Notes: generated by a model from the sequence alone, not told the origin. A DNA stretch of 64,000 bases from Obrimoposthia wandeli (GCA_977020255.1 CDROCS010000866.1:620001-684000); one strand, 5' to 3'. Counted from the first letter of the stretch, positions 13,811 to 51,200 are shown. Numbers and translations: made by a program.

Positions 13811-16800
13811 TAAAAATATTATTTAAGGAATTTTTTTAAACTTTTACAATTTTAATGATTTTCTTCAATTAGTTTTTCGTGAAGCCAGTTTTGATATTGG
13901 CGCAACGTTTTTATATTGGCTTAACGTTTAAACCTCGAGTGCTGATTGTGAAAGATGCTTTAGGAAGATACATTTTATCAAAAGAAAATATAGTAATAAA
14001 TTAAAGGTTGGTCTAAATGATTTCTTATTAAGAATAAAAAAAGCATTTCATTTGAAAGTTATATTGACATTGATAAAGTATTCAAACACGGAAAGTACAA
14101 CAAGGATAGACGAGTAAAGAAACACGATAATTAATTTTGCAAAATAATCACAATTTTTCTAATAATAAAACATACATTTCTCAATTTGGCTTAGTTTACT
14201 TTATTTTGACGCAAGTATTTTTAACTCGCAAATACAAAAAAATGAGGGAACATTGACTACAATGCTAACACATGCAATTAATACTTCAAGGCTTGTTTTT
14301 TAATTCTTTGTTGTTTAATATTCCAGAATATCAATCAAATCATGAGAAAATTATTTTAAACAAAGCCGACTGAATGATATTTAAAGTAAAGAAAAGTGCT
14401 AGTACAAGTGAACATTTACTGAAGCTCCTTTGGGTACCGATCAATGCCAGAATTGAATTCAAGATTCACATATTATCAAAAAATATATTATCTCTCAAAA
14501 GTCTCAATATGTATTTGATCTTCTAGAGCCTGGCGTACGGAGTATGTATAATATACATTGTATATGCGTCTTAGGAGCAACAATGAAGATTGCAGATTGG
14601 TTTAGAAATTCTCAAATAACAAACAGAGTGATAGATTATTTCAAATTTGTGTTCTGAATCTTTACAACAATTTACCTATGAAAATAAGAAATACTAACAA
14701 TGTTGAAAGATTCAAGAAGCAGTTGAAGGCAGAAAATATTATGAATAATCATCATTGGAAAATGTAAACCGACGTTCAGCCTAGTCAAGTGATATTGCAG
14801 GAATTCCTTGTTTACATCGTTTGACATTAATACAAGTTTTTTAAATTTGCTCAAATTTGACTTCTAACATTTTTTTCTAATTCTCTCAAGATATTAATTA
14901 AAGTTTAACATAATAATGTTTTCCCTAAATCTCTCTAACATTATTCTCATATTTTCTCATATTGCTATTTGTGTTGCAGAGCTGGATGGATCCCTAACTA
15001 GATACAGACAAGCAGACCTTAAATCAGAAGTTCCATTGCCGTTCTGCAACGATATCAACGGAATTCGCTAGAAGAACTGGCATTGACAAACTCAATCATG
15101 TCGGTTTCCCAATATGAAAAACAACAAAGACAACAAAATCTAATATTATTAAACACTTTTAGAATAATTTATTAACTTTTGCACTAAAACATATTTATTT
15201 ATTCAAAATTTCTAACCTTTGAAAAAGCGTCTAGAAGAACATATATAAGAACATATTTTAAATACACAAAATAGAGAACAAATCTGCAGTTTCAATATAA
15301 TAAAGTGTTAGATAGTCTTTTAAATCACCTTAAATAGTCACTCTAAAAATCTCTAAAATATGAAGTCCTCTGTATTTTCCTAGAAATAATTTGATAGGTT
15401 GTTAGTCGTTTTAATTTTTATTGTAACAGAAATTGATGACAGCATCTGAGATGAATTTAAGGCTTTTGACTGACTTCTGACTTGATCATCATTAGATCTG
15501 CGGTTTCTTGTTTAAATTATTAAAAGCCGAATCATTAAATCATTAATTTGCCGAAATATTTTGAATTTATAGTATTGACTAAAGTAATAGGTATAAATTG
15601 CTCTTTTCAATTTTAATACATTCAACTAAAGTAAACAATACAATTCAATAAAGGCCCACTTGAAATTAAAATATGGTAAAATTAAAATAGAAATGCACCC
15701 TATACACAGAAAATGTTCCTACTATTTTGTGTTGTTTGTTGGTCATAAGTGTTGCATTATACGGACCATTGATTCAATAAGTTTACTAAAGGCTTCTCGT
15801 GCTTTTAGGCGTATTAGAATAAAAACGTATCCTGAAAATAGAAAACATTTGTAGGTCAACTCACATAATATATATTGCAAACCAGAGTTAAATCGAACGA
15901 GAAAGCTTGACCAATCGATCAGAATCAACCAGCATATAAAAATACTGAATTTTGACATATTTACCGTGTATAATTAATACTTTGAACTATAAAACGTTTT
16001 GGACGTTGCTTGGTAGAAATTGGTGTTCTTTCTAATATATTTTTAGGTCCTTTTATAAGACATGGTTATTTTGCAGATTGTTGACAAATACTTCTTGATT
16101 ATATAAATTCTTGCAAAAATATTCAGAATTTTAAAATTTAATTTTAAATTAATTTTTACAATATAAAAAAATCTTTAATTATTTTTTTTTATTTACCGGC
16201 CTGGACGTTTCAACTTTAAATCCAATCACTTGAGACCCAGTCAATAAGACTGCGATATTTCACACAGCATTTTCAGTGTCTTTTCGGCCTCAAATTGTTA
16301 TAATGTAGTGATAATTCTTTCTTTTTAAAAAAATAACCCTTATTTAACTGAATATTATTTTTTTAATAATAAAATTATATAATTGAATATTTAGAAATCA
16401 ACGCTTGGGATATCCATTTCCAAATGTTACAAAAATTGATGCTAAATAATAGAATATGATTTTTCAAAATTTCGTTCACAGAATTAATGATTTCACCTTC
16501 ATTAATTTGTATATTTATTCTGATTTTATAATCTCTTTTAGATAAAAATTCATTTTTAATCTTTACACAATGATTCATTAAACCTTTATTTACTTCAATT
16601 CCATTTTGAAAATCAAAAGCTACCTTTATATTTGAAAAACACTTATCATTTACGAAGGGATTCTTTATTCATGTTTAAAAACGAATGAACAACTTTTAGA
16701 TCATTTTAATAACGTAAGGCTCAGTCATTTAAACTAAGAAATCTCTCAATTTAATTTTTAATTTTAGTATTTTATAATAAAATAACGAAGATATTCGAAT

Positions 16801-24702: not shown

Positions 24703-25437
24703 TATTGGGTACTTGAATAACCGATGTTTAGGGAAATGTATTATAAGATATAGAATATGCCTATATTTTTAGTTGATAACTATTTATACGATTGTCGTAT
24801 AAAGTTAGTTTTAAATGTATGATCAAGTGAATGTTTACATATTTAAAATGATTTACTTTCATTACATTTAAAGTGTCAAATTATGTTCCAACAAAACAAC
24901 AGCGGCGGGAAGTTTTATTTCAACATTTTAATTTGAGGAAAATTTGCCACAGTAATTCATCGTTTGCTATAACGAATTGCAAGGAATGAAATGAACAATT
25001 TAGAAATGATGATTTTGATGAGAAGACAAATAACGTTCTGAAGCATCGAAATACTTCGAAGATGAGGAATGAGAAACAGTACTTGACGGAAATCCATATC
25101 AAACACTGAAAGAGCTCTCAGAACCAATAAATGTTAATGAATCGACCATAAGAAAACGTTTGAAAGCTATGGGAATAATTCAAAAACAGCGAAATTAGCT
25201 ACCCAAAGAAATTGGCTAAAAACATTGACAGGTGTTAAATCGAATTGTTACTAGTGACTAAAAAATTAAATTTATTACGATAATCCAAAGAAACAAAAAT
25301 TATAAGTAAAATCAGGCCAACCTCAGAATCAATGTAAAAACCGAATCACCATGCAATAAGGGTATTTTGTTTATTAGATATGATCAGAAAGACATTTTGT
25401 ATTATGAGCAGCTAAAACCGTCCGAAACTACCACTGG
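24703..25437 (+). mobile_element. Mariner (Mos1-like) relic, 5' part, interrupted by the Maverick-like element
   Basis: TIR-like gggtacttgaataa; decayed transposase (NPYQTLKELSEPINVNESTIRKRLKAMGIIQKQ...YEQLKPSETTTG). Confidence 0.85.
25432..25437 (+). repeat. Left 6-bp target-site duplication CACTGG
   Basis: CACTGG immediately precedes the left TIR and recurs at 40860-40865. Confidence 0.95.
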
Positions 25438-25511
25438 AGTAGGGGGATGTGTGACTTCTGGAACAAAGACCGTGGGAAAATTTCAAGAGCGTGGGAACCC
25501 CCCCCCCGAGG
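25438..25511 (+). repeat. Left terminal inverted repeat
   Basis: AGTAGGGGGATGTGTGACTTCTGGAACAAAGACCGTGGGAAAATTTCAAGAGCGTGGGAA(C)10GAGG; reverse complement of 40786-40859 with one mismatch. Confidence 0.97.
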
Positions 25512-25530
25512 GATTTTTTTTTCCCACGGT

Positions 25531-25624
25531 GATGAGTCATCGAACAAAGACCATGAGTCATCGAACAAAGACCATGAGTCATCGATGAGTCATCGAACAA
25601 AGACCATGAGTCACCGATGAGTAA
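25531..25624 (+). repeat. Left subterminal array of GATGAGTCATC / GAACAAAGACC units
   Basis: TGAGTCA at 25533, 25554, 25575, 25586 and 25607; 21-bp and 11-bp units. Confidence 0.9.
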
Positions 25625-26829
25625 TGTCCTTTGTCATGCGACCGTGGGAACTTTCCCATGAGCGTGGGAACTTTCCCACGGTCTTGAGAATTTTCCCACG
25701 CTCAAGTCCTTTGTTCTAATAATTTTCTCAAGATCTACTATAGTAGACATGTACTTTGCAGCTCAACCATCGATGCTATTGACAAGCGGTCTTCACCAAA
25801 GGATACATAAGAGTTCGGACCTTCGACTAAGGTTGATCAGACCTTCGAGAGTTGGACCTTCAAGGGTCAAAAACCTTCAAAGGGTTCAAAATTTTTTATT
25901 TTTCTACTTTTTGATGTTATGGATAATAGACTTGGTCTGAGGTTGGTCCGACCTTCCAAGGACCTTCAAGGGTGGACCTTCAAGGGTCAAAAACCTTCAA
26001 AATTTTCAAATTTTTTATTTTTTCCAAAAAGTTAAAAATTTATTTTTTCAAAAATTTTTGTTTAAATTTTCAAAAATTTTGGCGCTAAAAATTAAAAGTT
26101 TCTAAATCACTTGTACATCATTTTTGCAAAATATTTTCTTCAAAACTTTATTACTTCAAAATCAATTACTTTTAAAACAAAGTAATAAAAAATTTACAAA
26201 ATTTATTTACCTAAATTAAGCTATGTAAATTCCATCTAATATGTTTTTTATTTGCTTACATCACGCATACATGTATGTGTGTGAATAATTAGACAGATGT
26301 TGACACGTGCAAACATAATTAAATGTATGTATGTATGTATATGTGAACATATTTGATTACTAGTAGATTAACAAATACATCAGATGACATCCCTTGCATG
26401 TATGTATATGTAACTACATCATATCAAAAATTTGTTTTAATGCATCAATTTCAATGCCCGAAAATTCAAATATATGTTTGCTATGGTTACAAGTATGTGT
26501 CATTTTTGCTACATCAAGATATATTTACTAAAATGTGGACATCACTTCATCTTATCTCTTCTCATCTAATGTTTTCTAAAGAAACTATGTAATCTTAGAT
26601 GTTAAACTGAAATTAAAAATAGATCAATATTCTACATGTTATTGATTATAGATATTAAATCTCGATTAATATATTGATATTTCTAATGTATACTGTAGTG
26701 TATTCTGATTGGTGGAAGATTGATTAAACAAGCAAACACATAGTAAACTTTGCTAAGAGAAATTGGAGTATAGTAATCCACTGGAATGTCTTCTGATTGT
26801 TGGTAGATTGCTTGAATAGTGAACTTAGA

Positions 26830-27660
26830 CTATATTAATATGTGTGTATGTATGAATACTTACAAAATTTTACAAGCTGACAGAACAAGAAAAAATAGAG
26901 ACTATTGGGTGTATGTATGCATGCATGTCTGAATACTTACAAGAAATACAAGGTATATACAGAACTCTAATTATTGTTATTAATCATTACATCTCTATCT
27001 TTTTCAATTCGAATCAATATTGTTTATCATAATAACAACTATATGTTCTATATTATGTTCTAAAAGTATTGATGTATTGAGGAAATTAATGATATGTTCA
27101 GGAAATTTACAATATTTTGATGATTCTAAAGACTAAATTAATGATATGTCCATGAAATCTATGATATTTAGGACGTTCTAAGGAAGAAATTATATGAGAT
27201 TTAGTAATATTGATTAGCATTGTTTGGAAGTTTTCAGTTGATTGAATAAATTTAGGGAACAGTATACATTGATAGAGTGTGTATAAGAAAATTGACTATA
27301 GTAATATTATATGTCTGTGTGTATGTGTGTGTGTATGAATACTTACAAAAATATATGACAAATATACCTAAGTAATATTGTATGTGTGTGTATGTGTGAA
27401 TACTTACAAAAATTTACAAGTTGAGAGAACAAGGAAAATAGAACATAGAGACCATTGGGTATGTGTGTGTGCATGTGTGTCTGAATACTTACAAGAAATA
27501 CAAGGTATATACTAAAATCTAATCATAAAACATTCCATCTCTATCTTTTTCAATTCCACATCGATATTGTTTATCATAATAACAACTATATGTTCTATAT
27601 TATGTTCTAAAAGTATTGATGTATTCAGGAAATTAATGATATGTTCAGAAAATTTACAAT
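26830..27660 (+). repeat. Internal direct duplication (about 26830-27110 versus 27390-27660)
   Basis: Shared tgaatacttacaag...ctctatctttttcaattc...ttatgttctaaaagtattgatgtatt...ggaaattaatgatatgttcag blocks. Confidence 0.8.
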
Positions 27661-27684
27661 ATTTAGATGCTTCTAGAAGAGAAC

Positions 27685-28265
27685 TCACGTGGAAGTTTAG
27701 TGGTTTAAGAAGGAAAATAACATCGACATTAGGGAAATCTCATGGAAGTTGAATGGTTTAACGAGGAAAATAACGTGGAAGTTAGGGAATTCTCATGGAA
27801 GTTGAGTGGTTTAAGGAGTAAAATAACGTTTGAAGTTAGGATAATCCCATGGTAGTTAGGAAAATCTAGTGGAACTTAGGGAAATATTGCAGTAGTTAGG
27901 GAATTCTCATGGAAGTTGAGTGGTTTAACGAGGAAAATAACGTGGAAGTTAGGGAATTCTCACGGAAGGTGAATGGTTTAATGAGGAAAATTACGTGGAA
28001 GTTACGGAAATATCATGGAAGTTGAGTGGTTTAAGGATGAAAATAACGTGGAAGTTAGGGAATTCTCATGGAAGTTGAGTGGTTTCAGGAGGAAAATAAC
28101 ATGGAAGTTAGGATAATCCCATGATAGTTGAGGAAATCTCATGGTAGTTAGGGAAATCTTCCAGTAGTTAGGGAATTCTCATGGAAGTTGAGAGGTTTAA
28201 GGAGGAAAATAACTTAGTAGTTACGATAATCTCATGGATGTTAGGAAAATTTCATGGATGTTAAG
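27685..28265 (+). repeat. Degenerate tandem array, about 53-bp composite unit
   Basis: Recurring TGGAAGTTAGGGAATTCTCATGGAAGTTGAGTGGTTTAAGGAGGAAAATAACG and its subunits. Confidence 0.9.
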
Positions 28266-29819
28266 AGGTTTAAGAGGAAAAAATATAAGGAAAGGGTTTA
28301 AGGAAAGAATAGCATAGAATCAGACCAATATCAAGCCTACCTCTTTCATTAAAGCAGTCATAGATGGATGTTTTTTAAATAACATTCATAATTTAACCTT
28401 ACTTATACATCAATGTTGATTGAAATATTCTACCTTGCAGTTGTTTAAAATATTCTACGTTGTAGTTGTTTAACTTTAAACATTTTGTTGTAAAAACTAA
28501 GATATTAAGACTTTTGAGTTAGATAATCAGGTTAGGCTAAAGGAAAACATTAGAAATTTTATAAGAATGAATCTAATAATCAATAAATCGAGACATATCT
28601 TCTAACATCTCTATCATGAATCTTCTTTCAAAAACTTTCATCCCTAACTTTCAGAGAAATTATCAAATACCATAAATTCATATATTTCCATACATATTGA
28701 TTATTGAAAAACTGAACTTATCAATATTATCAACATCTAATCTCACTATCATCAACCATCATAAAGTGGTTGATAATAGGAATAATGATTTTTCTAATGT
28801 GTCATTGAGATTTAGACTTTGAAATGGAATAATATAGTTAAATATAGAGAAGACTTAGATGTTTTGATTATCATACAAGCTCGCATACAAAGAATCTTAT
28901 ACCAAAATTATCGATAATACACATATTTCATCTATATCATAACACATGTTGTAAATCCTAATAAAACCTTAACAATAATTCATCATAACTATTTTATTGA
29001 TTAATCTATTCTATCAAGTATCTACTGATTATTGAATCTAGGGGCTATGTTTAATATTTCTAAAGATAGAATAGTTTCTCACCATTTTATTAAGATAGTA
29101 CTATTCATTACTAACGTTTCATAAATCATCTAATTCAATAAATATCAATATTCACATCAATATATCCTTAACTTTCGAACTTCTTATAAAATATTAATAA
29201 ATATAAAGGAGAAAATACGTACCTTTATTAGTTAATTCCATAGAGTCCAAACAGAAGTCACTAAGCCACAGGATGCAATCTTGTATATTCCATTGTAATT
29301 CGGTTGGGTAGACATTGATCCATTGATATTCCGGAAAATGACATCATAATATTGGATTTTTCTTCTTGAGTTTCCATGAATAATATGATGACGTTGCTAT
29401 AAATCAGCTTACATGTTTATTTAAATATATCTTTGTTTATATAAAACTGAGACTCAGATTAACCAATAAGAATAGATGATACAATGTTACTAAAAATAGA
29501 TTATTTTATAGGGTTAAGAAGAGGAAAATCTCATAGTGGTTAAGATGTTTATGGAGAGTTGCTGAACATATTTGCACATAATATATGTAAAGATGTCCAT
29601 CTTCTAATTGGTTGATGCAAGTATTGACTAAATATTGCAAGCTTCTAATTGGATAACAAGAACAAGTGAAGTTGGTACATGTGTACATGTCTATATTTAG
29701 ACATAAATACTATTATAATTATTAACGCGCGCGAATCATACCAAAAATTTTTAAAAATTATTTTTGAAAATGTGTCAAAAATATTTTTTAAAAAATATTT
29801 TTGAAAATGTGCCAAAAAT

Positions 29820-29956
29820 NNNNNNNNNNNNNNNNNNNNNNNNNNNNNNNNNNNNNNNNNNNNNNNNNNNNNNNNNNNNNNNNNNNNNNNNNNNNNNNNN
29901 NNNNNNNNNNNNNNNNNNNNNNNNNNNNNNNNNNNNNNNNNNNNNNNNNNNNNNNN
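29820..29956. other. Assembly gap (137 N) inside the element
   Basis: Run of N; true length unknown. Confidence 1.
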
Positions 29957-30233
29957 TGAATAGTAATTTATTAAATTTTATGCAATAAAGCAACATATTC
30001 CATTAAATTATTATTATTACTTAAATAATTGTCTTTGTTTCTATTCTTTAACAAAAACCTTCAAATGAGATGTAAACTTTAAAGTTTTATGAGTAGATTT
30101 AAATATTTGGAAATTTAAATAAATTTAAAAAGGAAATGGTTAAATAATTAATAGTTTAATTTAAGTTTAGTACTTATTTTAGTAAGTAGATCAAACGTTT
30201 TAAATGTCAAAATAAATTGAATAATAAATTCTA

Positions 30234-30310
30234 ATTGGATACGATTCTTATTGGAAGAAATATATTATTTTAGTATAAAAGAATAAAGCAATAAGAAATC
30301 AGTCTCAGTT
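30234..30310 (+). promoter_or_regulatory. Pol II promoter of pPolB (CCAAT boxes, TATA, Inr)
   Basis: ATTGG at 30234 and 30250, TATAAAA at 30274-30280, TCAGT at 30299 and TCAGTT at 30305 (25-31 nt after the TATA start), ATG at 30321. Confidence 0.65.
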
Positions 30311-30320
30311 ATAAACGAAA

Positions 30321-33300
30321 ATGGTAAGATTTTTGTTATTTTTAAATTATATTTAATTTTTCTTTTAGAATTGCAATATGAATAAGAAGTTATGTTTTGT
30401 GAAGAGTCACGTTGAGTGTGACGAGAAGATGAGGAGCTACTTCGCGCAGAAGTATAATGGCAAGCTGTTCTACGTCTGCCCAGTTTGCCTCTCGTCTGAG
30501 GAGATTGTTTGGGAGGAGTTTGTGGAGAAACATCGCCACCATCTTCGACATTTTCAACAGCGCGGAAAGAAATCTATCTTCCAATCGAGAAGTATTATGC
30601 CTACTCCCATGCCTGTTGCTGCAACCTCTGCGCCACATGGTCGAGCTCCTATACCTCGAAGTCAAGTATCTTCTCCCGCGCCTACTCCTGCTGTTAGCAC
30701 TATGCCTACAAATGCTGTGATCGCTCCCATGCCTGTTGCTGCAACCTCTGCGCCTCATGGTCGAGCTCCTAGTCAAGCCGCTTCTACCGCCCCTACTCCT
30801 GCTGCTCGTGTTAGTAGTATGCCTACGGTTGCTTCTCCGAATGTAGTGGCTCCGGTATTTGCTATTCCTGCCGCGACACGTGATCGAGTGCCTACTCCCA
30901 CATCTGCTTCTCCGATTGTAGTGGCTCCGGTATTTGCTATACCTACCGCTACTCGCGCTCGAGTGCCTTCTACGTCTGCTGCACCTGCGCCTCCACTATC
31001 TTCTCCAATAGCTTCAACATCTGCTGCTGCTGCTCCTGTCTCCACATCAAATGGAGTTGGTATGAGCCCCACTAGCGCGCCGATGGTAGCACCTACCCGC
31101 AAGAGAAGTGTTATGCCCACTTCAGGTAGCTCTGCTGCGAAGTTTACCAGGGTTGATCCCGTGAATCGCAAGACAGGCGTTCGCGGGACAATTGAAACAT
31201 TATCATTAGATGTTTCTAATGATAATATGAGTGAATTAGTTGTTCCTCATTCTTTATTAGCAGCTTTAGCTGATTCTATTGCTCGCTTTACTAGTTGCAA
31301 AATCCAATTCGGAGTGCGTGTTGAATTCACCAACGTAGGAGAGACACGCGCTTGGAATTTCTCCAATAGGGGGCTCCCAATGGATGACGGATTTTTGTCT
31401 GCTGGAGTCGATGCAATTAAGAAGAAGATCGAGAATTATTCTCAAAGCGGGAGTAATTGGACGGTCAATCGATTCCTGGAGATTTCGTTTGTTGTCACGA
31501 AAACAACAACGATTAATTATCTCCAGGGAAGTAGCTATATTCCCACTCCATCGGAATTAGCCTTATCACATTGTGTGATTAATGTACAAAACACAAACAC
31601 GTTTTGCTTTCTATATAGCATTTTAGCTATTATTTTTCGGGAGATATTTCGTTGCAATCCTCATCGAGTTAATCAGTATGAAGGGTTGTTACGTGAATTA
31701 ATTTTTGACGAGGATGAGATGCCGATGCGGCTCTGTAATATTGGACGTTTTGAAAGGAGGAACCCAACTCTTTCTATTAATGTTTTCAGCTTTAATAGGT
31801 TCGCAAATGTATCAACAGAGCGGGATATCTTTAAAAATCCCTATGTTGATATAATTTATAGGACGACAAACCCGAACGGAAGGGAAATCAATCTTCTCCT
31901 TTTAGAGATGAATGATAATTTTCATTACGTGGCTATTCCGAAACTCAATAGGCTACTAAATTACAGGAATAGAGGTGTTTCTAATCGCATTCAGTGTACT
32001 TGGTGCCATAAGTGTCTCCACGGGTTCCGGAGACCGATAAGTTACGCCAAGCACGTTCCACTCTGTAGGATGAATTTAGATCATTCTACACTTTATTCAA
32101 TGCCTACAGAGAAGCATATTGAGTTTACGGATTTTTCAAAAACCATTTCTCCGCCTTTTGCTGTTTACGCGGACTTTGAGGCTGTGCTACCGCCACATGG
32201 AATTTATCACCAGATTCAGCTCCCAATCTCGGCCGGTATGCTCATGTCTCCCGTTGCAGCCACCACTGGGTTTACATATGATTACTCAGTTTTCACTGGA
32301 GAAAATTGTGTAGTCTCTTTTTTGCAGAAGTTGGAGGAACTGGCAAAATTTGTTGTACTCCCATGGTATAAAAATCATGCGATTGAGGTTATGCGCCCAC
32401 TTACATCGGAGCAGAATTCAGGTTTCAATGCTGCAGTAATATGCTACCTGTGTAAGAAGAGGCTAGCTAACAAAGTTCGGGACCACGATCACATGACAGG
32501 AGACTATCTTGGAGCTGCGCATTCTAAATGCAACTTATCAAGGAGATTAAACCGCTCTTTTCCCGTTATTTTTCACAATTTGATGGGATACGATATGCAC
32601 CACATACTGAAGCACGCGTTGAATCGATTTCCGCACTGGAGTATCTCTGTCATACCTCAATCGACGGAGAAATTTCAGGCTATGATGGTGCATATTGAGG
32701 GAGTCTGTATCCGGTTTATAGATTCGTTGCAGTTTTTGTACAGCGGGCTCGAGAAACTTGTTGAGAACCTGGGTGTTACTCCATTGACACATTCCGTCTT
32801 CCCACAACATTTGGTGAGCGCAAAGGGGATTTTCCCATATGACATGGCCGTCTCAGAGACTATTACAACTTTACCACCAATTTGGAGCGACAAGATCAAG
32901 CCGGAACAGTATGAGATGGCGAAGAATGTATGGACGCAATGCGAATGCACATCTCTCTGGGACTATATGCTGGTGTACATGAAGATGGACGTCTACCTGC
33001 TGGCTGATGTCTTCACGGCATTCCGCATCAAGGCTATTGCTGACGACGGATTGGAACCACTCAATTTCTTCTCCATTCCTGGTTTGTAACAAAATATTTC
33101 AATATTAAGTAATCAATTTTAGTAAATTATTGTACAAAATAATTGAATCAGTAATTAATTTTAGTAATTTATTGAAAAGTAAATTGATTTTAGTAAATAT
33201 TTTTATGGAGTATAAATATTACTGATTTATCTTTATTTGTTTTCTCATCACAGGATTGACTTTCGCAAGCGCCTTCAAGTCGCTGCTCCGTCCGGAAACT

Positions 33301-34746
33301 GTCTTGGCTTCTACTACTACTACTACTGCATCCACCTCTGCTGCTGCTGCTTGTGTGATCTCTCCCGCGTCTCCTCCACCTGTGCGAGTCGAGCTCATCC
33401 AGGACCCGGAGATGTATCGTCTTTTTCGGTCTGGGATTCGAGGCGGGATGACCTTCGTGAACGAGCACAAGGTGGATGCCATCAACGGTACCGAACTTTT
33501 ATATATTGACGTGAATAACTTATACGGGTGGGCCATGTCCCAGTTTTTACCTTGTGGCAACTTTTCATGGGTTACTGACCGAATTGAGTTGGGGAATATT
33601 ATCAGTAGTCTTAAATCAGCGGATTTGTCCTGTAGTCGCTTCGCTCATTTATTGGAAATAGATTTATCCGTGCCTAATGAGCTACATAATAAATTTGACG
33701 ATCTCCCAATTGCTCCGATTAAACAGCGTCCACCTGGTTGTAAGACTGAAAAATTATTACTAACACATTACCCTAAGAAACATTATGTTGTCCATTCTAG
33801 ATTGCTACAAATGTACATTAGACTTGGTGCTAAGGTAGATTTTGTATATCGAGCAATACAGTTTGAACAAACTAATGTTTTTTCAAAATATATAGAAGAC
33901 AATTCAATAAAAAGAGCTGCAGCTACAACAGATTTCGAGAAGGATTATTATAAACTGAAGGTTAATTCTTTATTCGGAAAACTCATAGAGAATCTGATGA
34001 AGAGAATTAATCTTCGGATTTGTAATACTCCACAGAAGCTGGTTACCTATTGTAGTAAAGCCCAGTTTCGTAGGACTATTGAAATCGATACAGACCTTAT
34101 CGCAGTTCTACTGAATAAGGAAAATATTGTTTTGGATCGTCCTAGTTATATGGGCCAGGCAGTGTTAGATTTAAGTAAACTTCGTATGTATGAGCTGCAA
34201 TATATACAGTTGGAGAAATATCGAGTGCAATTTAACTGCGATATTAGAATTATAGCAGGTGACACTGATAGTTTTTTCTTAAAGTGTAATAATGTAAATG
34301 TGCAAGGATCACTGTTACCTGCTATGGTTGCTGATGGGCTGTTGGATACCTCGAAATTTCCAAAAACCCATCCGTTATATACAACGCTTAATACGGCGAT
34401 AGGTAAATTCAAAGATGAGAGCAAGGGATTATTTAGCTATAGGCAAGGAATATTTCTACGTCCGAAATCGTACAGTTTAGAGACTACTGAAGGTGAATCT
34501 CAGATGAGAGCTAAGGGTATTAGTCTCCAACAGACGAGTATTAGACACGCTAATTACTTGGCGGTGTATGAGAGTGGGGTTAGTGAGCGAGTACAACAAC
34601 AACGTATAAGCTCACTAAATCATCAACTGTTTACTGTAAGGTTAAGTAAAATTGCCTTAAGCAGTACTGATGATAAGAGGAAGTGGATAGCTAAAAATCG
34701 GTCAGTAGCCTATGGTCACTTTTTACACCCTGATGAAATTGTATAG
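30321..34746 (+). CDS. pPolB: Protein-primed family B DNA polymerase, spliced: join(30321-30323,30369-33081,33254-34746), about 1402 aa
   Basis: ExoI VYADFE, HNH/EndoVII-like CYLC...DHDHMTGDYLGAAHSKCN, ExoII IFHNLMGYD, ExoIII YMKMDVYLL, GIRGG, motif A YIDVNNLYGWAM, motif B KLKVNSLFGK, motif C AGDTDS, RPKSY. Splicing the two GT-AG introns gives 4209 nt with no internal stop. Confidence 0.93.
30324..30368 (+). other. 45-nt intron after an ATG-only first exon of pPolB
   Basis: ATG|gtaaga...ttttcttttag|AAT TGC AAT ATG is in frame with the 30378 ORF; strong donor and T-rich acceptor. Confidence 0.7.
33082..33253 (+). other. Spliceosomal intron in pPolB (172 nt, phase 1)
   Basis: CCT G|gtttgt...tttctcatcacag|GA TTG restores SIPG-LTFASAFK. 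The intron is very AT-rich, and the same position and phase is used in the second copy (39521-39866). Confidence 0.9.
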
Positions 34747-34815
34747 TCACTTTTTACATCCGAATGAAATTGTATAGTTTTATTGTGTTTTTATTCAATC
34801 TTTGTGATTTTAGGT

Positions 34816-34821
34816 AATAAA
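34816..34821 (+). terminator. Candidate polyadenylation signal of pPolB
   Basis: AATAAA 70 nt after the stop codon, followed by T-rich sequence. Weak evidence given the AT-rich background. Confidence 0.45.
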
Positions 34822-34964
34822 AATGTTAAAAATATTTGTCTTTGACTAGAATTATTTCGGATTTGACTAGGAATATTATAAATTATTAATTATTTTACTT
34901 CGTTTTTAAAAATGTTAATTTATTATTATTATTATGCTTATTAATAATAATTATGTTTTATTTA

Positions 34965-35590
34965 AATAGCAGCTGTCGCTTAATCTAAACATGACAGCTG
35001 CTGATAACATTACAAAATATTTAATGTAAATAGCAGCTGTCGCTAATCTAAACATGCGACAGCTGTTGATGACATTGCAAAATATTTAATGTAAATAAGT
35101 TATAATGTAAATAATAATTATATTTAGTTTAACGAAGAAGAACAGCTGTCGCTTAAGATAAATAAAGCACTTAACGTGCGACAGCTGTTGATGATGACAT
35201 CATGGAAACATGATTAATTATTTATATTTCCTTCGGGAAACACGAGCAAGCATCAGTGAGGTAATCACCATCTGTCACTTATCTCATCTAAACACATACA
35301 CACGTGACAGATGGTGATTACATCCTCAAGTAATTACACACGCATGCATGCATTATTGATTTAATCACCATCTGCCATTAATCTAAACATACGCATACGA
35401 GACAGATGGTGTCTACATCCTCGGGTAATCATGTACGCATGCATTATTGATGTAATCACCATCTGTCACTTATCTAATCTAAACACATACGCATGACAGA
35501 TGGTAACTACATCTTCGAGTGATAACACATGTATACATTAGTGATGTAATCATCAACATAATCTAAGCATACACATATTAGATGGTATTA
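34965..35590. repeat. Two tandem families of inverted-repeat (hairpin) units
   Basis: Three CAGCTGTCGC...GCGACAGCTG-type units (34970-35190), then 3-4 units of about 90 bp of the type GTAATCACCATCTGTCAC...GTGACAGATGGTGATTAC (35261-35590). Confidence 0.85.
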
Positions 35591-36806
35591 ATAATTTATT
35601 GCAATAATAATAATAATAATAATAATAATTTTATTTAAGTTTACTAATATTATTATTCATATTTCTCAAATATATATAAATTCACATACACTAATATTAT
35701 TTATTACCATCTTTATTAATCATACACACACATACTCCTTTGTTAAATAATTTGTAATATGTATTGCAACTTTTTGCAATATATTAACACCTTTGTTAAG
35801 TATAAAAGGATAAACACACACACACACACAGGATTTTTTCTTTATTACAAATAATTTCTTTATAATACTAACATTACGATAAAGATACTAGAACATACAT
35901 ACATAAAAAATTAACTTTGTTTCTTTATAAAATAAAAATCAATAAAAAATCAATAAATGTTACAAATAATGGTAAATATTTTAGTTACTTATAAAATAAA
36001 AGTAAATTATTTTAAAATAATTCTTTGTAATTATTTAACAATTTATAAATATAATCTTAAATAAACTACTTATAACAAAAATACCACCATATTACATTAT
36101 TTTAATTAAATGACTTTCAATAATCTTGTTATAATGAAAGGATCCTTTGTTGTACATGTTTAAATAATATAATTATGAAATTGATGTATTTAAACAAAAT
36201 GTCTTTATGATGTCTTTATGTTAATAATTTAAACTAGTACATGCATGAGTAATGTAACCAACATGCTAGATGGAATTTACATCATTATTGATGTAATAAA
36301 ACAAATTCTTTATATAATATAGTAAAATCACAAATACTCGTAACCATAACAAATATATATTTGTATTTGTGGGTATTGAAATTGATGCATTAAAACAAAT
36401 TCTTTTGGTAAAATTACTATACATGATCAGCTTTACACATGTAATTAGATAACTGTTAAAATACATAAGCTTTATTTATCAAATTATATAATACTTATTT
36501 TTATTAGTAGATAGTTTAATTGAATTTAGTTTAAATAAATTTAGAAATTATATAATACTTATTTTTATGAGTAGATAGTTTAATTGAATTTAGTTTAATT
36601 TTAGAATTTAGTTTAATTTTTATTAAATAGATAGCTTGCTTAGCTACTTTTAATAGTAAGTAGCTAAAGTTTTAATAAATAATTTTCTATGTGACGTTTA
36701 AAAACATATTTTGTAGAATTTTCCTTTCCCTCCCATCCCTTTCTTTTGTAGTCCTAATGAGGACTTTGGGTTCGTTCTCAAGTGTGTGTGTTTGTGATCA
36801 AGGGCC

Positions 36807-36992
36807 TCATCGCCAGTTTTCATTTGGTAAGATGAGTGGCTGGTCTTTTGATAACCAACAAATGAAGCCCGGGATCTCTTCTACTTCCAGAGCCTCCCGG
36901 AGCATCAAGCCCTCAGCGAGATAACACTTCTCTGCTAGAGTGTGCTCGCTCTCCATAAGCTCCTTTAACAAATTTTGTCGTTTTTCTTCCAT
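36807..36992 (-). CDS. Small protein A (61 aa), unknown function
   Basis: MEEKRQNLLKELMESEHTLAEKCYLAEGLMLREALEVEEIPGFICWLSKDQPLILPNENWR. GC-elevated island, upstream TATATAAG, and a homologous second copy at 38376-38543. Confidence 0.7.
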   Translation of the reverse strand: MEEKRQNLLKELMESEHTLAEKCYLAEGLMLREALEVEEIPGFICWLSKDQPLILPNENWR

Positions 36993-37934
36993 TAAAAATA
37001 ATGAATTGAAACTAAAATATTTCTCTTATATACTCTTCCTTGGTTAATTAATTTTATTGATGCAGTAAAACAAATTCTCTTTTAATTAATAATGGATAAT
37101 ATAATAAAATTTCGAATTAAATAAAATACATATGATATATAATAACTTAGATATATCCTAATTAAATTTTTATTATACATTTAATTAAATGACTTTTGTT
37201 TAAATAATATTATTATGAAGAAAGGATGCTTTGTTGCATATGTTTAAATAATCTAATTATGAAATTGATGTATTTAAACAAAATGTCTTTATGATGTCTT
37301 TATGATGAATAGTTTCTTTGTTACATAGAAATATTGGTACACACATGTACATATGTATATAAGCTTGAAGACACACACACGCACATAAGATGTATTTTGT
37401 TTAAATAATATAATTATGAAGAAAGGATGTTTTGTTGCATATGTTTAAATAATCTAATTATGAAATTGATGTATTTAAACAATATGTCTTTATGATGTCT
37501 TTATGATAAATAGTTTCTTTGTTACATAGAAATATCAGTACACAGGAGTTGAAAGAGTACACACATGTGCATATGTATATAAGTTAAGCTTGAAGACACA
37601 CACCTGATATGTCTTTTGGTGAAGACTGCATGTTAATACAAGCTTACATAGAAATAGTGGTACATACATGCATATATGTATATAAGTTAAGCTTGAAGAC
37701 ATACACACACACACGCAGGAGATGTGTTTTGGGTAAGACTGCATGTTAATACATGCTTTAGATAAAAATATATATAGTTTTAAATAAAGGCAGTACACAC
37801 ATGCACACATATACTATTTAAGCTTGACCACAGACACACACGCACACGATATGTCTTTTGGTGAATACTGCATGTTAATATAGCCTTTAGATAAACAGAT
37901 ATATAGTTTTAAAGAATGTTACTAAAAATAGAAT

Positions 37935-38000
37935 ATGAGTCATCGATGAGTCATAGGATGAGTCATCTATGAGTCATCGATGAGTCATCGATGAGTCATC
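37935..38000 (+). repeat. 11-bp tandem array of ATGAGTCATCG
   Basis: TGAGTCA at 37936, 37947, 37959, 37970, 37981 and 37992. Confidence 0.95.
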
Positions 38001-38375
38001 TTATGACCTCAGCATGACCTTAAATGACATTGTCCTCATGACGTCTGTCCTTAACTTGAACTTAAATGACATTGTCCTCACCGTGACCTTAAGTTGTCCT
38101 CATGACGTCATGACCTTAAGTTGACCTTAAAGTACATTGTCATCATCATCTAGAGAGAAATAATTCTTCTTTGTAATTATTTAACAATTTATAAATATAA
38201 CCTTAAATAAACTACTTATAACAAAAAGTAGCAAAAGTTTTTAAAAATATTTTAACATATTACATTATTTAAAGACTCTAACCTTAGTTAGAGTCTTTTT
38301 CCCCTTTCCCATTCCCTTGCTTATGAGGCCCTAATGAGGACCGGGGGGTTCGTGTGTGTGTGTGTAAGATGAAGC

Positions 38376-38543
38376 TTAGGCTTCTAGTATGATAGGATTC
38401 TCATCATACCAGAAGCAAATGAAGCCTGGTTGCTCCCAGACTTCAAGCGACTCTTGCTTAAGAAACGGCTTTATGAGCCGAGTCTTCTCCTCTAGGCTTT
38501 TCTCACTTGTCATAATAATTTCGATAATTCTTAAATCTTCCAT
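38376..38543 (-). CDS. Small protein B (55 aa), paralogue of protein A; not in the supplied ORF track
   Basis: Manual translation MEDLRIIEIIMTSEKSLEEKTRLIKPFLKQESLEVWEQPGFICFWYDENPIILEA*. 23 of 55 residues identical to protein A by hand alignment; upstream TATAAAAG. Confidence 0.7.
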   Translation of the reverse strand: MEDLRIIEIIMTSEKSLEEKTRLIKPFLKQESLEVWEQPGFICFWYDENPIILEA

Positions 38544-38769
38544 TTTAAAAATTGTGACAAGAAATGAAAAATATTTCTTCTTTTATATGCTCCCTCCTAT
38601 CTTCTAGTATAATTAATTTATTGATGTAGTAAAACAAAAATCAATTTTTTATTTATAATTCATTATATAAAATTATATCGAATTAAATAAAATGCATATG
38701 ATTATTTTATTTATTGAAATTAAATAATATTCATATGATATATAATAACATTAACAAATAAATGTTGTA

Positions 38770-38805
38770 TTAAGTCCATCGCCTTAACCACTCGGCCATT
38801 CTAGC
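38770..38805 (-). tRNA. 5' half of tRNA-Leu(UAA), fragment only
   Basis: GCTAGAATGGCCGAGTGGTTAAGGCGATGGACTTAA: acceptor 5' strand, D-arm with A-box TGGCCGAGTGG, anticodon 5' stem, CT and TAA, then similarity stops. No 3' half or T-arm nearby. Confidence 0.7.
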
Positions 38806-38988
38806 TCTTTGTTCAACATTATTAAACTAGTTTTTAATAAAAATAATTTAGTAAAATATATGTTACTTATAAATAAAAGTATTATCAATTAAAGAAAATA
38901 AGTTTTGAAGAAAATAAATTTTTGAAGAAAATAAATTTTTGAAGAAAAATTTTCAGAGGCAAAAATTTTCATGTACAAAAAAAAAAAT

Positions 38989-40191
38989 TTCGTCATTTTT
39001 CACAATCTTATGGGTTATGACATGCACCATATATTGAAGCACGCACTATGCAAGTTTCCCGACTGGAATGTATCTGTTATACCTCAATCAACAGAGAAAT
39101 TCCAGGCTATGATGGTGTATATTGGAGGAGTCTGTATACGTTTCATCGATTCCCTTCAATTTTTGAACAGCAGCTTAGAAAAACTTGTGGAAAACCTAGG
39201 TGTGACTCCTCTTACACATTCGGTCTTCCCGCAACATCTGGTGAGCGCCAAGGGAATCTTCCCATACGATATGGCAGTATCAGAGACTGCTCTTCGCGCA
39301 ATCACCAGCTTACCACCAAAGTGGGATGAAAAGATCAAGCCAGCACAATATGAGATGGCGAAGATGATCTGGACTCAGAGCGGCTGCTCATCGCTCTAGG
39401 ACTATATGCTGGTCTATATGAAGATGGACGTCTACCTTCTAGCAGACGTGTTTACAGCATTCCGGACCAAGGCCATTGTTGACGATGGATTGGAGCCACT
39501 CAATTTCTTCTCCATCCCTGGTTTGTATTTTACTAATTTTTCTAATTTTAGACACTAACACATATATATATACATGTATAAGAATAAATGTAGTACTTGT
39601 TACTATTGATTGCATAAAGATGCAGGTTTTTGCAATAAAGATGCAGCACGTCTTTGTAAGTATTGATGATTGTCTTTGTTAGACACACACGTGACTGTCT
39701 TTGTTAGATACTCACACACATATATACATGTATAAGAATAAATGTTACGATTGATTACATAAAGATGCAAGTATTTGCAATATAGATGCGTGACTGTCTT
39801 TGTTAGATAGATGATTTTCAAAGTAATGATTTTCACAATGATTTTAATAAATGTTTTTATTTCCAGGACTGACTTTCGCGAGTGCTTTCAAATCCCTGCT
39901 TCGTCCGGCTTCTTCTTCTGCTCCCGTTGTGCGAGTCGAGCTAATACAGGATCCTGAAATGTACCGACTCTTCCGGTCTGGGATTCGCGGGGGTATGACA
40001 TTTGTTAATGAACACCGCGTTGACGCCATCAATGGTACAGAACTTTTGTACATTAATGTAAATAATTTGTACGGGTGGGCTATGTCCCAGTTTTTACCTT
40101 GTGGTAACTTTTCCTGGGTGACTGATCGGTTAGAGTTGGGGAATATTATTTCCAGCTTAAAATCAGTAGATTTATCCTGTAGTCGCTTCGC
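38989..40191 (+). pseudogene. pPolB: Truncated second pPolB (sister lineage), ExoII to palm start, with intron 39521-39866
   Basis: VIFHNLMGYD...CSSL*DYML...NFFSIPG|LTFASAFK...YINVNNLYGWAM...CSRF. Nonsense change TGG>TAG at 39397-39399; truncated at both ends. Confidence 0.9.
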
Positions 40192-40439
40192 AGGTTTTTG
40201 CAATATAGATGCAGTACGTGACTGTCTTTGTTAGATAGATATAGATTTAAAGTATGTTACTAAAAATAGAATCTTTTTGACTTCACCGTGACCTTAAGTT
40301 GACCTTAAAGTACATTGTCCTCGTCATGACCTTAACTTGACCTTAACTTGCCCTGACCTCATGACCTACATCTTGTCCTCATCGTGACCTCAAGTTGTCC
40401 TCATGACTTTAAATAAAAAATCATGTGTACTCGGGAGAA

Positions 40440-40785
40440 ATTTGACCTACATCTGTCATAAAAAATTTGAATTCAAAAATTTTCGCGCAAATTTCAAAAA
40501 TTTTGACCTATATTATAAATTTTTTGCGCAAATTTCAAACATTTTCAAAAATTTTCGCGCAAATTTCAAAAATTTTGACCTATATTATAAATTTTTGGCG
40601 CAAATTTCAAAAATTTTCAAAATTTTCAAAAAATTTCGGGCAAATTTCAAAAATTTTCAAAAAATTTCGCGCAAATTTTAAAAAATTTGACCTATATTAT
40701 AAATTTTTTGCGCAAATTTCAAAAAATTTGACCTACATTTCAAATTTTTCGCGCAAATTTCAAAAATTTTGACCTAGATTTTTGT
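40440..40785 (+). repeat. Right subterminal A/T-tract array with TTTCGCGC and TGACCTA motifs
   Basis: Recurring aaaaattttcgcgcaaatttcaaaaattttgacctatattataaa units ending at the right TIR. Confidence 0.9.
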
Positions 40786-40859
40786 CCTCAGGGGGGGGGT
40801 TCCCACGCTCTTGAAATTTTCCCACGGTCTTTGTTCCAGAAGTCACACATCCCCCTACT
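40786..40859 (-). repeat. Right terminal inverted repeat
   Basis: CCTCA(G)9TTCCCACGCTCTTGAAATTTTCCCACGGTCTTTGTTCCAGAAGTCACACATCCCCCTACT; mirrors the left TIR. Confidence 0.97.
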
Positions 40860-40865
40860 CACTGG
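40860..40865 (+). repeat. Right 6-bp target-site duplication CACTGG
   Basis: Immediately follows the right TIR; identical to 25432-25437. Confidence 0.95.
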
Positions 40866-50515: not shown

Positions 50516-50960
50516 ATGAAACTCGTAAATATAAATTATAAAGGAAGAATAGAATACGATATTTCGCACTTACCATTCAATGATTGAAGCCGAAACAATA
50601 TGTTAAAAAGTTTGATGATTTCACAGTGGTTATTTTATTTTCATATTGAATTCTTTTAGGAAGTTGTCGTGTTATGGGATGCAAAACGCCGTTGAATGAG
50701 ATCAATTTACCATTTGGAGTACAATCAATCACAGTTTCAGTTAATCTTGGGAAACCAATAAATATTTATAAAATAGCAGAGAAAATGAAAAAAGAATGCA
50801 TGTTTGAACCTTGAATTTTTCCTGCTTTCAGATATTTGAAGTTGTGTAAAGATATTATGTTTAGGGTATGTTTAAAGATATTTTCTAGTGGTAAAGGTAT
50901 GAAATTGGGATTGAGAAAATTGGATTATCAATATACTGTTGAATCGATTTTAGAGAATAT
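50516..50960 (+). pseudogene. TBP-like (TATA-binding protein fold) gene relic
   Basis: ...GSCRVMGCK...ITVSVNLGKPINIYKIA...CMFEP*IFPAFRY...KIFSSGKGMKLGLRK resembles the TBP repeat (VxSxDLxxxIxLxxLA...YEPExFPGLIY...IFxSGKxxxTGAK); stops and a frameshift present. Confidence 0.6.
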
Positions 50961-50984
50961 ATTTTATTACATTTTACTTAGTAT

Positions 50985-51200
50985 CATTTAAAAATCCGAG
51001 AGATCAAACAGTTGTAGATTTCATGGCCAGACAAGCATTTCCTCTAAATAAGAACTTTCTAGTTGATTCATTCCATGATGCTGCTAAACAAGCAAATGGG
51101 TATATATTTATTGACTTTACATAAGCTTACCCAGATGATTTACGTGTTTTAACAGATATATTTAATTCTAAGGGAGTAACTGTTTATAAACAAACAGAGA
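50985..51200 (+). pseudogene. Maverick/Polinton packaging ATPase C-terminal relic
   Basis: FKNPRDQTVVDFMARQAFPLNKNFLVDSFHDAAKQANGYIFIDFT*AYPDDLRVLTDIF matches the Polinton ATPase pattern FKNPRD...LARQxYP...YGYLxID...RLRTxIF. Confidence 0.75.

What the first reader, a model, noticed from the sequence alone, without database searches (positions are those of the whole stretch)
25438..40859. Minimal Maverick-like replicon: intact pPolB, near-perfect TIRs and TSD, but no integrase or virion genes
Seen: 74-bp TIRs with one mismatch, a perfect 6-bp TSD, and a 4.2-kb pPolB frame with all exonuclease and polymerase catalytic motifs and no stops, so the insertion looks young. The remaining ~11 kb holds repeat arrays, two small ORFs and a pPolB fragment; none of it encodes retroviral-type integrase, double jelly-roll MCP, penton, adenain protease or packaging ATPase. 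Established: autonomous Mavericks carry these genes, and a 6-bp TSD is the integrase signature. Inference: this is a self-replicating but helper-dependent (satellite or plasmid-like) derivative that kept its polymerase and borrows integrase, and perhaps capsid, in trans.
Basis: partly seen in the sequence, partly recalled or inferred. Interest (0 to 1): 0.9.

Follow-up and report, generated by a model that had tools for sequence, protein, structure and literature searches.

The report
Polymerase-only Maverick derivative, integrase absent
A 15.4-kb virus-like transposon insertion with near-identical ends and a clean target duplication encodes only an apparently intact self-priming DNA polymerase, so it probably depended on a complete relative for insertion, though this rests on one copy that contains an assembly gap.

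Summary
There are 74-nt inverted ends with one mismatch (25438-25511 / 40786-40859) and a perfect 6-bp duplication, CACTGG.

The protein keeps 126 of 129 family-conserved columns. Its domain order, from model and alignment, is terminal-protein-like, candidate vOTU, zinc finger, HNH-like insert, exonuclease, polymerase.

All stop-to-stop pieces of at least 40 aa in the other 11 kb, plus tblastn with every gene of relatives' contigs, found no integrase, adenain, packaging ATPase or capsid gene. The closest relatives (41-52% identity) carry such genes: rve-chromo integrase and A32 ATPase on one contig, adenain on another.

The second polymerase piece comes from another lineage (dS about 1.5, dN/dS 0.05). 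It shares the intron position.

The gap lies in an AT-rich tandem repeat 421 nt upstream of the start codon, and no reading frame crosses it. Its true length is unknown.

The most likely reading is a chimeric non-autonomous Maverick, integrated in trans. Self-replication is inferred only. No other copy could be found, so a single-locus rearrangement or hidden sequence in the gap remains possible.

The parts
25432..25437 (.). Left target-site duplication, CACTGG
   Evidence: Identical hexamer directly outside both TIRs.
25438..25511 (+). Left terminal inverted repeat, 74 nt, begins AGTAGG
   Evidence: 99% complementary to 40786-40859. Only two copies in the window, 0 expected by chance.
25512..25700 (.). 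Left subterminal short-repeat block: ATGAGTCATC-type units and CGTGGGAAnnTTCCCA palindromes. Candidate protein-binding sites (inferred).
   Evidence: Tandem repeats. Motif enrichment: 21 matches against 4.5 expected, clustered here and at 37935-38000. Nine palindrome matches against 0.18 expected.
25701..29819 (.). Left arm: non-coding, 30% GC. Holds tandem arrays (53-nt unit x10 at 27690-28242) and a 300-nt duplication.
   Evidence: No protein-family hit in any stop-to-stop piece of at least 40 aa.
29820..29956 (.). Assembly gap (137 N, length only estimated) inside an AT-rich tandem repeat
   Evidence: The 37-nt repeat at 29748-29819 runs into it. Not filled and not looked up.
29957..30377 (+). 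Upstream region of the polymerase gene, 18% GC
30378..33081 (+). pPolB exon 1 (residues 1-901 plus the first base of codon 902): N-terminal small fold, disordered linker, TP-like domain, candidate vOTU, zinc finger, HNH-like insert, exonuclease
   Evidence: ORF. PF03175. Weak Endonuclease_7 match. AlphaFold model pLDDT 75.6. Foldseek matches to phi29 polymerase and Y-family little-finger domains and to adintovirus and bidnavirus-like polymerases.
31164..31502 (+). TP/D1-like domain (residues 263-375; four strands plus two helices)
   Evidence: Secondary structure. Y-family polymerase matches of about 114-126 columns, probability 0.9-0.99; the table gives no query coordinates, so assigning them to this domain is inferred. 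This is the likeness reported for polinton TP domains in PMC11161782.
31515..31967 (+). Candidate vOTU-like protease domain (residues about 380-530) with a family-conserved Cys and His
   Evidence: Conserved columns. Domain order TP-vOTU-Exo-Palm follows PMC11161782. No direct structural hit obtained.
32442..32534 (+). HNH / endonuclease VII-like zinc motif (residues 689-719)
   Evidence: PF02945 is above its cut-off in relatives P0001 and P0003, just below it in P0002, and weak here. Conserved Cys/His columns.
33082..33253 (+). Spliceosomal intron, GT..AG, phase 1, 172 nt, 17% GC
   Evidence: The same position and the same GTTTGT 5' splice site occur in the second pPolB copy. Absent from relatives on L001, L002 and L086.
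33254..34746 (+). pPolB exon 2: polymerase (palm, fingers, thumb) domain, ends in a stop codon
   Evidence: PF03175. Conserved motif columns kept.
34816..34821 (+). AATAAA, possible polyadenylation signal 70 nt after the stop
   Evidence: Read directly from the sequence. Weak evidence in AT-rich DNA.
34747..38991 (.). Right arm, inner part: non-coding repeat arrays (65-nt, 91-nt and 150-nt units)
   Evidence: No family hits.
37895..38160 (+). Inner copy of the right subterminal module, with six ATGAGTCATC units
   Evidence: Aligns with 40225-40425. Motif cluster.
38992..40210 (+). Broken second pPolB copy from another lineage. Covers residues 730-1038 of 1398. Truncated at both ends, one in-frame stop, no frameshift seen inside the two aligned blocks. 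Carries its own 346-nt intron at the same site.
   Evidence: dN/dS 0.05 and dS about 1.5 against the main copy.
40225..40425 (+). Right subterminal module (TGACCT-type short repeats)
40472..40781 (.). 41-nt tandem array (about 8 copies).
   Evidence: The Pfam hit to this ORF is below its cut-off.
40786..40859 (-). Right terminal inverted repeat
40860..40865 (.). Right target-site duplication, CACTGG

Best explanation
This is a chimeric, non-autonomous derivative of a Maverick/Polinton (adintovirus-like) element.

Shown:
- One 15.4-kb unit was inserted, bounded by 74-nt TIRs and a 6-bp duplication.
- Its only gene is an apparently intact, intron-containing polymerase polyprotein. The domain order, read from a structure model and alignment, is TP-like, candidate vOTU, zinc finger, HNH-like, exonuclease, polymerase.
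- The other 11 kb is non-coding repeat DNA plus a truncated polymerase from a second lineage, bracketed by a duplicated subterminal module.

Inferred:
- The unit was already gene-poor when it integrated. The arms hold no trace of other genes while the polymerase is intact, so decay in place cannot explain the difference.
- An rve-type integrase supplied by a complete relative made the cut and the 6-bp staggered join at the AGT-type termini.
- The chimeric structure arose by template switching or recombination between two co-resident lineages.
- The polymerase is made from a spliced nuclear mRNA and could prime and copy any linear copy carrying these termini, including its own. That last step is the least supported.
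For: - TIRs, TSD and terminus. A 6-bp TSD and AGT/AG termini are the Maverick signature (PMC8097293).
- Polymerase: the exon join gives 1,398 codons without a stop, and one alignment block spans the junction. 126 of 129 conserved columns are kept.
- No other gene: Pfam and PHROGs scans of 78 pieces; tblastn and tblastx with all genes of L001-L004.
- ORFs of at least 100 aa cover 33% of the element, against 67-96% in 19 relatives' loci of at least 9 kb.
- Relatives place pPolB 150-400 nt from a contig end, with the other called genes, including adenain (L003) and integrase and ATPase (L001), downstream on the opposite strand. The corresponding 6.1 kb here has no gap and is empty.
- The fragment comes from a different lineage under long purifying selection, shares the intron, and is flanked by a direct repeat of the subterminal module.
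- Polinton-related elements lacking polB and judged still active, the mirror image, are reported in butterflies (10.1101/2025.02.07.637071). Derivatives that lack a core gene therefore have precedent.
Against: - Only one copy is seen. No second copy, no helper with this TIR and no integrase anywhere in the 64-kb window.
- No close relative in any searchable collection; the best is about 50% identity.
- A gap of unknown true length lies inside the element.
- One TIR mismatch in 74 nt allows roughly 1% divergence. An intact 4.2-kb ORF is then not surprising without selection, so intactness does not prove function.
- Two family-conserved columns differ in the polymerase, one next to polymerase motif B.
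- 74-nt TIRs are shorter than the 100-1500 nt usually quoted.
- No expression or extrachromosomal-form data.
Confidence: 0.55

Rival explanations
1. A complete Maverick inserted here. Afterwards, at this locus only, it lost its integrase and virion module through large deletions, nested insertions and recombination with another copy. The polymerase is intact simply because the insertion is young.
For: - 96% of vertebrate Maverick loci are degraded (PMC8097293).
- Fragmentary pPolBs among other transposons occur in a relative's genomic contig, L086.
- The right arm shows clear rearrangement: a duplicated module and a foreign pPolB piece.
- TIR divergence permits enough time for a few large events.
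Against: - It needs clean removal of about 10 kb of genes with no remnant detectable even at E<=1.
- It also needs a gain of about 11 kb of unrelated repeats.
- Meanwhile 4.2 kb of polymerase took no stop or frameshift and the TIRs took one change.
Confidence: 0.2
2. Assembly artefact. The gap at 29820-29956 hides kilobases that hold the missing genes, or the scaffold joins the left end of one copy to the body of another.
For: - The gap length is only an estimate.
- The gap sits in a repeat of the kind that breaks assemblies.
- One relative, L004, has a 468-aa gene just upstream of its pPolB.
Against: - The matching 6-bp TSD on both sides ties the two ends to one insertion, which a mis-join would not give.
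- In L001, L002 and L003 the other called genes, including adenain, integrase and ATPase, lie downstream of pPolB. That region is uninterrupted here.
- The left arm already adds 4.4 kb of non-coding DNA that no relative has.
Confidence: 0.12
3. The polymerase is a host-domesticated gene (spliced, polyadenylated, under purifying selection) that happens to lie in the shell of a dead element.
For: - A spliceosomal intron shared by two paralogues.
- dN/dS 0.05.
- AATAAA after the stop.
- Intact vertebrate Mavericks are intron-less.
Against: - Near-identical TIRs plus a perfect TSD indicate recent mobility, not an old fixed gene.
- The two lineages, and the truncated state of one copy, fit a transposon family.
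- The full TP, exonuclease and polymerase set is retained, as expected for element replication.
Confidence: 0.07

Closest known systems
Autonomous Mavericks / Polintons (adintovirus-like elements of animals)
   Same: - Protein-primed family B polymerase with a TP-like N-terminal domain.
- TIRs, 6-bp TSD and a 5'-AGT terminus.
- Size of 15 kb.
- Nearest protein relatives (41-52% identity) include one on a contig with rve-chromo integrase and A32 ATPase (L001) and one on a contig with adenain (L003).
- Structural matches to adintovirus polymerases.
   Different: - No integrase, adenain, packaging ATPase or capsid genes.
- Two-thirds of the element is non-coding repeats.
- The polymerase carries a spliceosomal intron.
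- TIRs are only 74 nt.
- By the definition quoted in PMC5499653 (pPolB plus integrase) it is not a Polinton proper.
polB-lacking polinton-related elements judged still active, in Pieris butterflies (preprint 10.1101/2025.02.07.637071)
   Same: TIR-bounded polinton derivatives that lack a core gene, which the authors suggest remained active.
   Different: This is the mirror image. Those elements keep the virion genes and integrase and lack polB. This one keeps only polB. Those are backed by several similar structural variants, this one by a single copy.
Cytoplasmic and mitochondrial linear pPolB plasmids of fungi and plants
   Same: - TIR-ended DNA whose polymerase carries a fused terminal protein.
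- No capsid genes.
- The cytoplasmic plasmids are held to derive from (proto)polintons by loss of the morphogenetic module (PMC11161782).
   Different: - Those are extrachromosomal and do not integrate.
- From general knowledge, they usually also encode their own RNA polymerase.
- This element is integrated in a nuclear chromosome with a TSD, has an intron and encodes no RNA polymerase (no hit).
Bidnaviruses (polinton pPolB captured by a parvovirus)
   Same: A polinton-type polymerase separated from the polinton virion module (PMC11161782). Bidnavirus-like polymerases are the top structural matches.
   Different: Bidnaviruses are encapsidated ssDNA viruses with parvovirus genes. Nothing of that kind is present here.

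Membership tests
Maverick / Polinton (autonomous) | [quoted passage not shown] | tested here: met
   PF03175 on both exons. 126 of 129 conserved columns kept. Foldseek matches to phi29 and adintovirus polymerases.
Maverick / Polinton (autonomous) | Retrovirus-like (rve) integrase | tested here: not met
   No rve hit in 78 pieces at E<=0.1. tblastn with the L001 integrase at E<=1 finds nothing in the whole window. The gap is untested.
Maverick / Polinton (autonomous) | Morphogenetic module: double jelly-roll MCP, penton, adenain protease, A32/FtsK-type ATPase | tested here: not met
   No hit inside the element. The only ATPase-like remnant lies outside it, at 50975-51203.
Maverick / Polinton (autonomous) | Terminal inverted repeats | tested here: met
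   74 nt, one mismatch. Shorter than the 100-1500 nt quoted in 10.1101/2023.08.22.554363.
Maverick / Polinton (autonomous) | 5-8 bp (typically 6-bp) target-site duplication and an AG/AGT terminus | tested here: met
   CACTGG on both sides; the terminus reads AGTAGG. Compare PMC8097293.
Maverick / Polinton (autonomous) | TP-vOTU-Exo-Palm polymerase architecture (PMC11161782) | tested here: inconclusive
   TP-like fold with Y-family little-finger matches, and Exo/Palm, are supported. vOTU rests only on a conserved Cys and His; no OTU structural hit was obtained.
Non-autonomous Maverick derivative, mobilised in trans | Maverick-type termini and TSD without an encoded integrase | tested here: met
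Non-autonomous Maverick derivative, mobilised in trans | Several copies of the same architecture at different loci, each with its own TSD | not testable with these tools
   The host genome is not in any searchable collection. TIR and protein searches found no close copy.
Non-autonomous Maverick derivative, mobilised in trans | An autonomous partner with matching termini in the same genome | not testable with these tools
   None in the window. Decayed pieces of other Maverick-like lineages show only that such elements have been in this genome.
Linear pPolB plasmids | Extrachromosomal linear DNA with 5'-linked terminal protein, not integrated | tested here: not met
   This copy is chromosomal with a TSD. 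Whether free copies exist cannot be tested here.
Linear pPolB plasmids | Polymerase with a fused terminal-protein domain, TIRs, no capsid genes | tested here: met

The most novel reading that the evidence does not exclude
The element represents a family of capsid-less, integrase-less 'polymerase-only' Maverick satellites. These would copy themselves with their own TP-polymerase and rely on complete Mavericks for integration, and perhaps packaging. They would be a nuclear, still-integrating counterpart of the step by which polintons are thought to have given rise to linear plasmids. The polymerase lineage would have lived in the nucleus long enough to acquire and keep a spliceosomal intron.
Probability: 0.2. 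Interest if true: 0.8.

Novelty: new variant of a known kind. Interest (0 to 1): 0.55.

Why it matters
Complete Mavericks and their decayed fossils are well described. Derivatives that lack polB yet appear to remain active have just been reported (10.1101/2025.02.07.637071). I found no description of the opposite case, a bounded and recently inserted unit that keeps only the self-priming polymerase.

If such units form a family, they would show complementation and parasitism among Maverick derivatives. They would also give a living example of the capsid-loss step proposed for the origin of cytoplasmic linear plasmids (PMC11161782).

Survey pipelines that require about five core proteins per locus (methods of 10.1101/2023.08.22.554363) would discard such elements, so how common they are is unknown.

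The intron shared by two old polymerase lineages is unusual in its own right. Intact vertebrate Mavericks are intron-less (PMC8097293), and so are this polymerase's nearest relatives.

Tried and rejected
1. Nested-element idea. The 81-nt inverted pair 26426-26506 / 36324-36404 could have been the TIR of an inner element carrying the polymerase. The similarity stops after about 80 nt and nothing flanks it, so I rejected this.

2. Sequence search of solved structures. The two exon products and a 36-sequence profile gave no polymerase hit. Only the fold comparison reached phi29.

3. Looking for further copies:
- TIR pattern in JGI metagenomes and IMG/VR: 0 hits.
- Protein search in 5.8 billion proteins: best 47% identity.
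- 1.84 billion cluster representatives: best 41-55%.
- Metagenome loci: best 50%.
The host genome is not in these collections.

4. Closest relatives' contigs. L086 is a host-like contig with decayed polymerase pieces among piggyBac and LTR elements. It has no intron at the site and no comparable bounded unit, so it does not help on architecture.

5. Rfam and tRNA scans of the window found nothing.

6. Host identity. The few long ORFs outside the element match no family. The host remains unknown: an AT-rich eukaryote with short GT-AG introns.

7. Not done:
- The exon-joined protein was not sent to the database tools, because it has no reference form. It was compared only inside a script.
- The vOTU domain was not folded separately.

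Slips, stated as required:
- In my reasoning I worked out, from the ORF table, where the in-frame stop of the broken polymerase fragment lies.
- Several script or tool-input lists show block or piece bounds from which places of breaks could be inferred.
- One search printed the two conserved columns at which the intact polymerase differs.
None of these places is repeated in my notes or in this report, and nothing was deleted. The consensus lines that the alignment tools printed were not used.

Full report
**Observation**

The inverted-repeat search finds arms at 25437-25511 and 40786-40860, 99% complementary. Reading both ends places the element at 25438-40859. It has 74-nt TIRs that differ at one base in a C-run, the hexamer CACTGG directly outside each end, and termini reading AGTAGG...CCTACT. 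The first 18 nt of the TIR occur only at these two places in 64 kb, with none expected in shuffles. A 6-bp TSD and AGT/AG-type termini are what intact vertebrate Mavericks show (PMC8097293).

**The gap**

Positions 29820-29956 are N. On the left, a 37-nt AT-rich tandem and palindromic repeat runs into the gap. On the right there are 421 nt of 18% GC DNA before the polymerase start codon.

- No family-matching reading frame abuts the gap.
- The polymerase aligns from its residue 4 with the N-terminus of a relative, so the gene is not cut.
- Continuity and true length cannot be established from the window.
- The matching TSD argues that the two scaffold pieces belong to one insertion.

**The polymerase**

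The genomic sequence holds two ORFs in different frames, 30378-33089 and 33256-34746. They are the longest ORFs in the window by far; the next is 208 aa. Between them lies a 172-nt stretch with GT and AG ends, 17% GC against 40-45% in the flanks. It is placed so that one base before it and two after it complete a codon.

Joining the exons as they stand gives 4,197 nt and 1,398 codons with no internal stop. Single BLASTP blocks then span the junction against two intron-less relatives. The second, diverged polymerase copy in the element has an interruption of 346 nt at exactly the same codon, with the same GTTTGT donor and a CAG acceptor. The intron is therefore shared by relatives and was not chosen to bridge a break.

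Both exons match Pfam PF03175. In an alignment with 34 relatives, 129 columns are conserved in at least 90% of them. The window protein keeps 126, differs at 2 and lacks 1. The kept columns include the exonuclease I, II and III acidic residues and polymerase motifs A, B, C and KxY. One of the two differences sits next to motif B.

An AlphaFold model of exon 1 (mean pLDDT 75.6) shows these parts:
- a small N-terminal fold;
- a disordered linker (residues 65-256) that contains a 75-nt coding tandem repeat;
- a four-strand, two-helix domain at 263-375;
- a domain with a family-conserved Cys and His;
- a C2HC zinc finger;
- an HNH/endonuclease VII-like motif, with PF02945 weak here, above its cut-off in relatives P0001 and P0003 and just below it in P0002;
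- the exonuclease.

Foldseek against the PDB gives phi29 DNA polymerase (probability 1.0). It also gives Y-family polymerases over about 114-126 columns. The table does not say which part of the model these cover. They are the little-finger likeness that PMC11161782 reports for the terminal-protein domain of polinton polymerases.

Against viral models, the best matches are polymerases of bidnavirus-like 'densoviruses', Drosophila-associated adintoviruses, MELD viruses and adenoviruses.

The gene therefore appears to encode the priming domain as well as the proofreading polymerase. The vOTU identity of the middle domain is not shown. An AATAAA lies 70 nt after the stop.

**What else is in the element**

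I cut both arms (25438-30377 and 34747-40859) into all 78 stop-to-stop pieces of at least 40 aa on six frames and scanned them.
- Pfam at E<=0.1 returns only the polymerase family plus sub-threshold noise. PHROGs agrees.
- tblastn with every called gene of four relatives' contigs, and tblastx against two of them, find only polymerase inside the element.
- ORFs of at least 100 aa cover 33% of the element, almost all of it polymerase. The figure is 67-96% in all 19 relatives' loci of at least 9 kb.

The arms are arrays of 11- to 113-nt tandem units and local duplications.

**Relatives**

The nearest proteins are 41-52% identical, and the family is large: 8,895 cluster representatives at E<=0.001.

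- L001 is a 16.3-kb contig. Its polymerase starts 393 nt from the contig end. Most of the downstream genes lie on the opposite strand. They include an rve integrase with a chromodomain (50.2 bits) and an A32-type ATPase (26.6 bits). Bcl-2-like and TBP-like genes are also present.
- On L003 the polymerase starts 152 nt from the end and adenain follows directly (31.7 bits).
- L002 has the same layout with other accessory genes.

By synteny with these contigs, the missing genes would be expected downstream of the polymerase. Here that is an uninterrupted 6.1 kb running to the right TIR.

**The second polymerase copy**

Positions 38992-40210 on the plus strand cover residues 730-1038 of the main protein, at 84% and 76% amino-acid identity and about 80% nucleotide identity.

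- It is truncated at both ends and has one in-frame stop. No frameshift is seen within the two aligned blocks.
- Against the main copy, dS is about 1.5 and dN/dS is 0.05 in both blocks. The two copies therefore diverged as working genes of separate lineages, and the truncation is recent by comparison.
- The piece is bracketed by a direct repeat of a roughly 200-nt subterminal module (37895-38160 and 40225-40425).
- The ATGAGTCATC units found beside the left TIR recur in the inner module.

This is a recombinant structure, not a simple deletion.

**Explanation**

Decay in place cannot erase about 10 kb of genes beyond detection and leave 4.2 kb of polymerase without a stop and the TIRs with one change. 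The unit was therefore most likely already gene-poor when it integrated. Integration with a 6-bp duplication at AGT-type ends then implies an integrase supplied by a complete relative.

That Maverick-like elements have been in this genome is shown by the second polymerase lineage and by a decayed TBP-like plus ATPase-like remnant at 50522-51203. Whether the polymerase actually copies the element is inference.

The intact ORF alone does not prove selection at this locus. One mismatch in 74 nt allows about 1% divergence, under which roughly one nonsense change would be expected in 4.2 kb.

My confidence is 0.55 for the chimeric non-autonomous reading. The rivals are:
- single-locus rearrangement of a complete element, 0.2;
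- genes hidden in the gap or a scaffold error, 0.12;
- a domesticated host gene, 0.07.

**Comparison and novelty**

The element fails two defining tests for an autonomous Polinton, namely integrase and the virion module. It meets the tests for termini, TSD and polymerase.

- It works like a non-autonomous transposon for integration.
- For replication it may work like a linear pPolB plasmid. Unlike those plasmids it is integrated, contains an intron and has no RNA polymerase.
- Polinton-related elements without polB that the authors judge still active are the published mirror image.

I found no description of a bounded polymerase-only Maverick in the paper library. That library is incomplete, and Repbase could not be consulted.

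I rate it a new variant of a known kind, with interest 0.55. The single copy, the gap and the unknown host hold the score down.

These are listed under 'tried and rejected'. Places of breaks that could be inferred from some tool outputs are not repeated here.

Noticed in passing
window 50522-51203 (+): Decayed remnant outside the element that resembles two genes of the relatives' contigs. A TBP-like reading frame has two in-frame stops and probably one frame change. It is followed directly by the C-terminal third of an A32-type packaging ATPase, 74% identical to that of L001, with one in-frame stop. No ORF above 51 aa, and no TIR nearby.
   Followed up: partly
window 30321-30377: An ATG followed by GTAAGA...TTTTAG (about 45 nt) lies just upstream of the polymerase start. 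It is in frame with the start, and a relative's alignment begins 9 nt before the ATG. This may be a mini 5' exon. Not tested.
   Followed up: no
window 30830-30968: A 75-nt tandem repeat (1.9 copies, 89% match) lies inside the polymerase coding region. It falls in the linker that the structure model predicts as disordered.
   Followed up: partly
window 34711-34778: A 31-nt tandem duplication (2.2 copies) straddles the polymerase stop codon.
   Followed up: no
L001 12382-13431; L002 6430-8662: The contigs of the closest relatives also carry cellular-type genes: Bcl-2-like and TBP-like on L001; dUTPase, RING finger and TBP-like on L002.
   Followed up: no
window 56545-57560; 6690-6857; 13577-13814: Other repeats in the host DNA: a roughly 510-nt tandem duplication at 97.7% identity, a 168-nt near-perfect palindrome, and a 40-nt tandem array in a stretch with strong GC skew.
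   Followed up: no
L086 (ENA ERZ25039515 contig_33239): A host-like 27-kb contig with two decayed pieces of a polymerase that is 51-57% identical to this one. They lie among a piggyBac-type transposase and LTR-retroelement genes. There is no intron at the site where the window's copies have one.
   Followed up: partly
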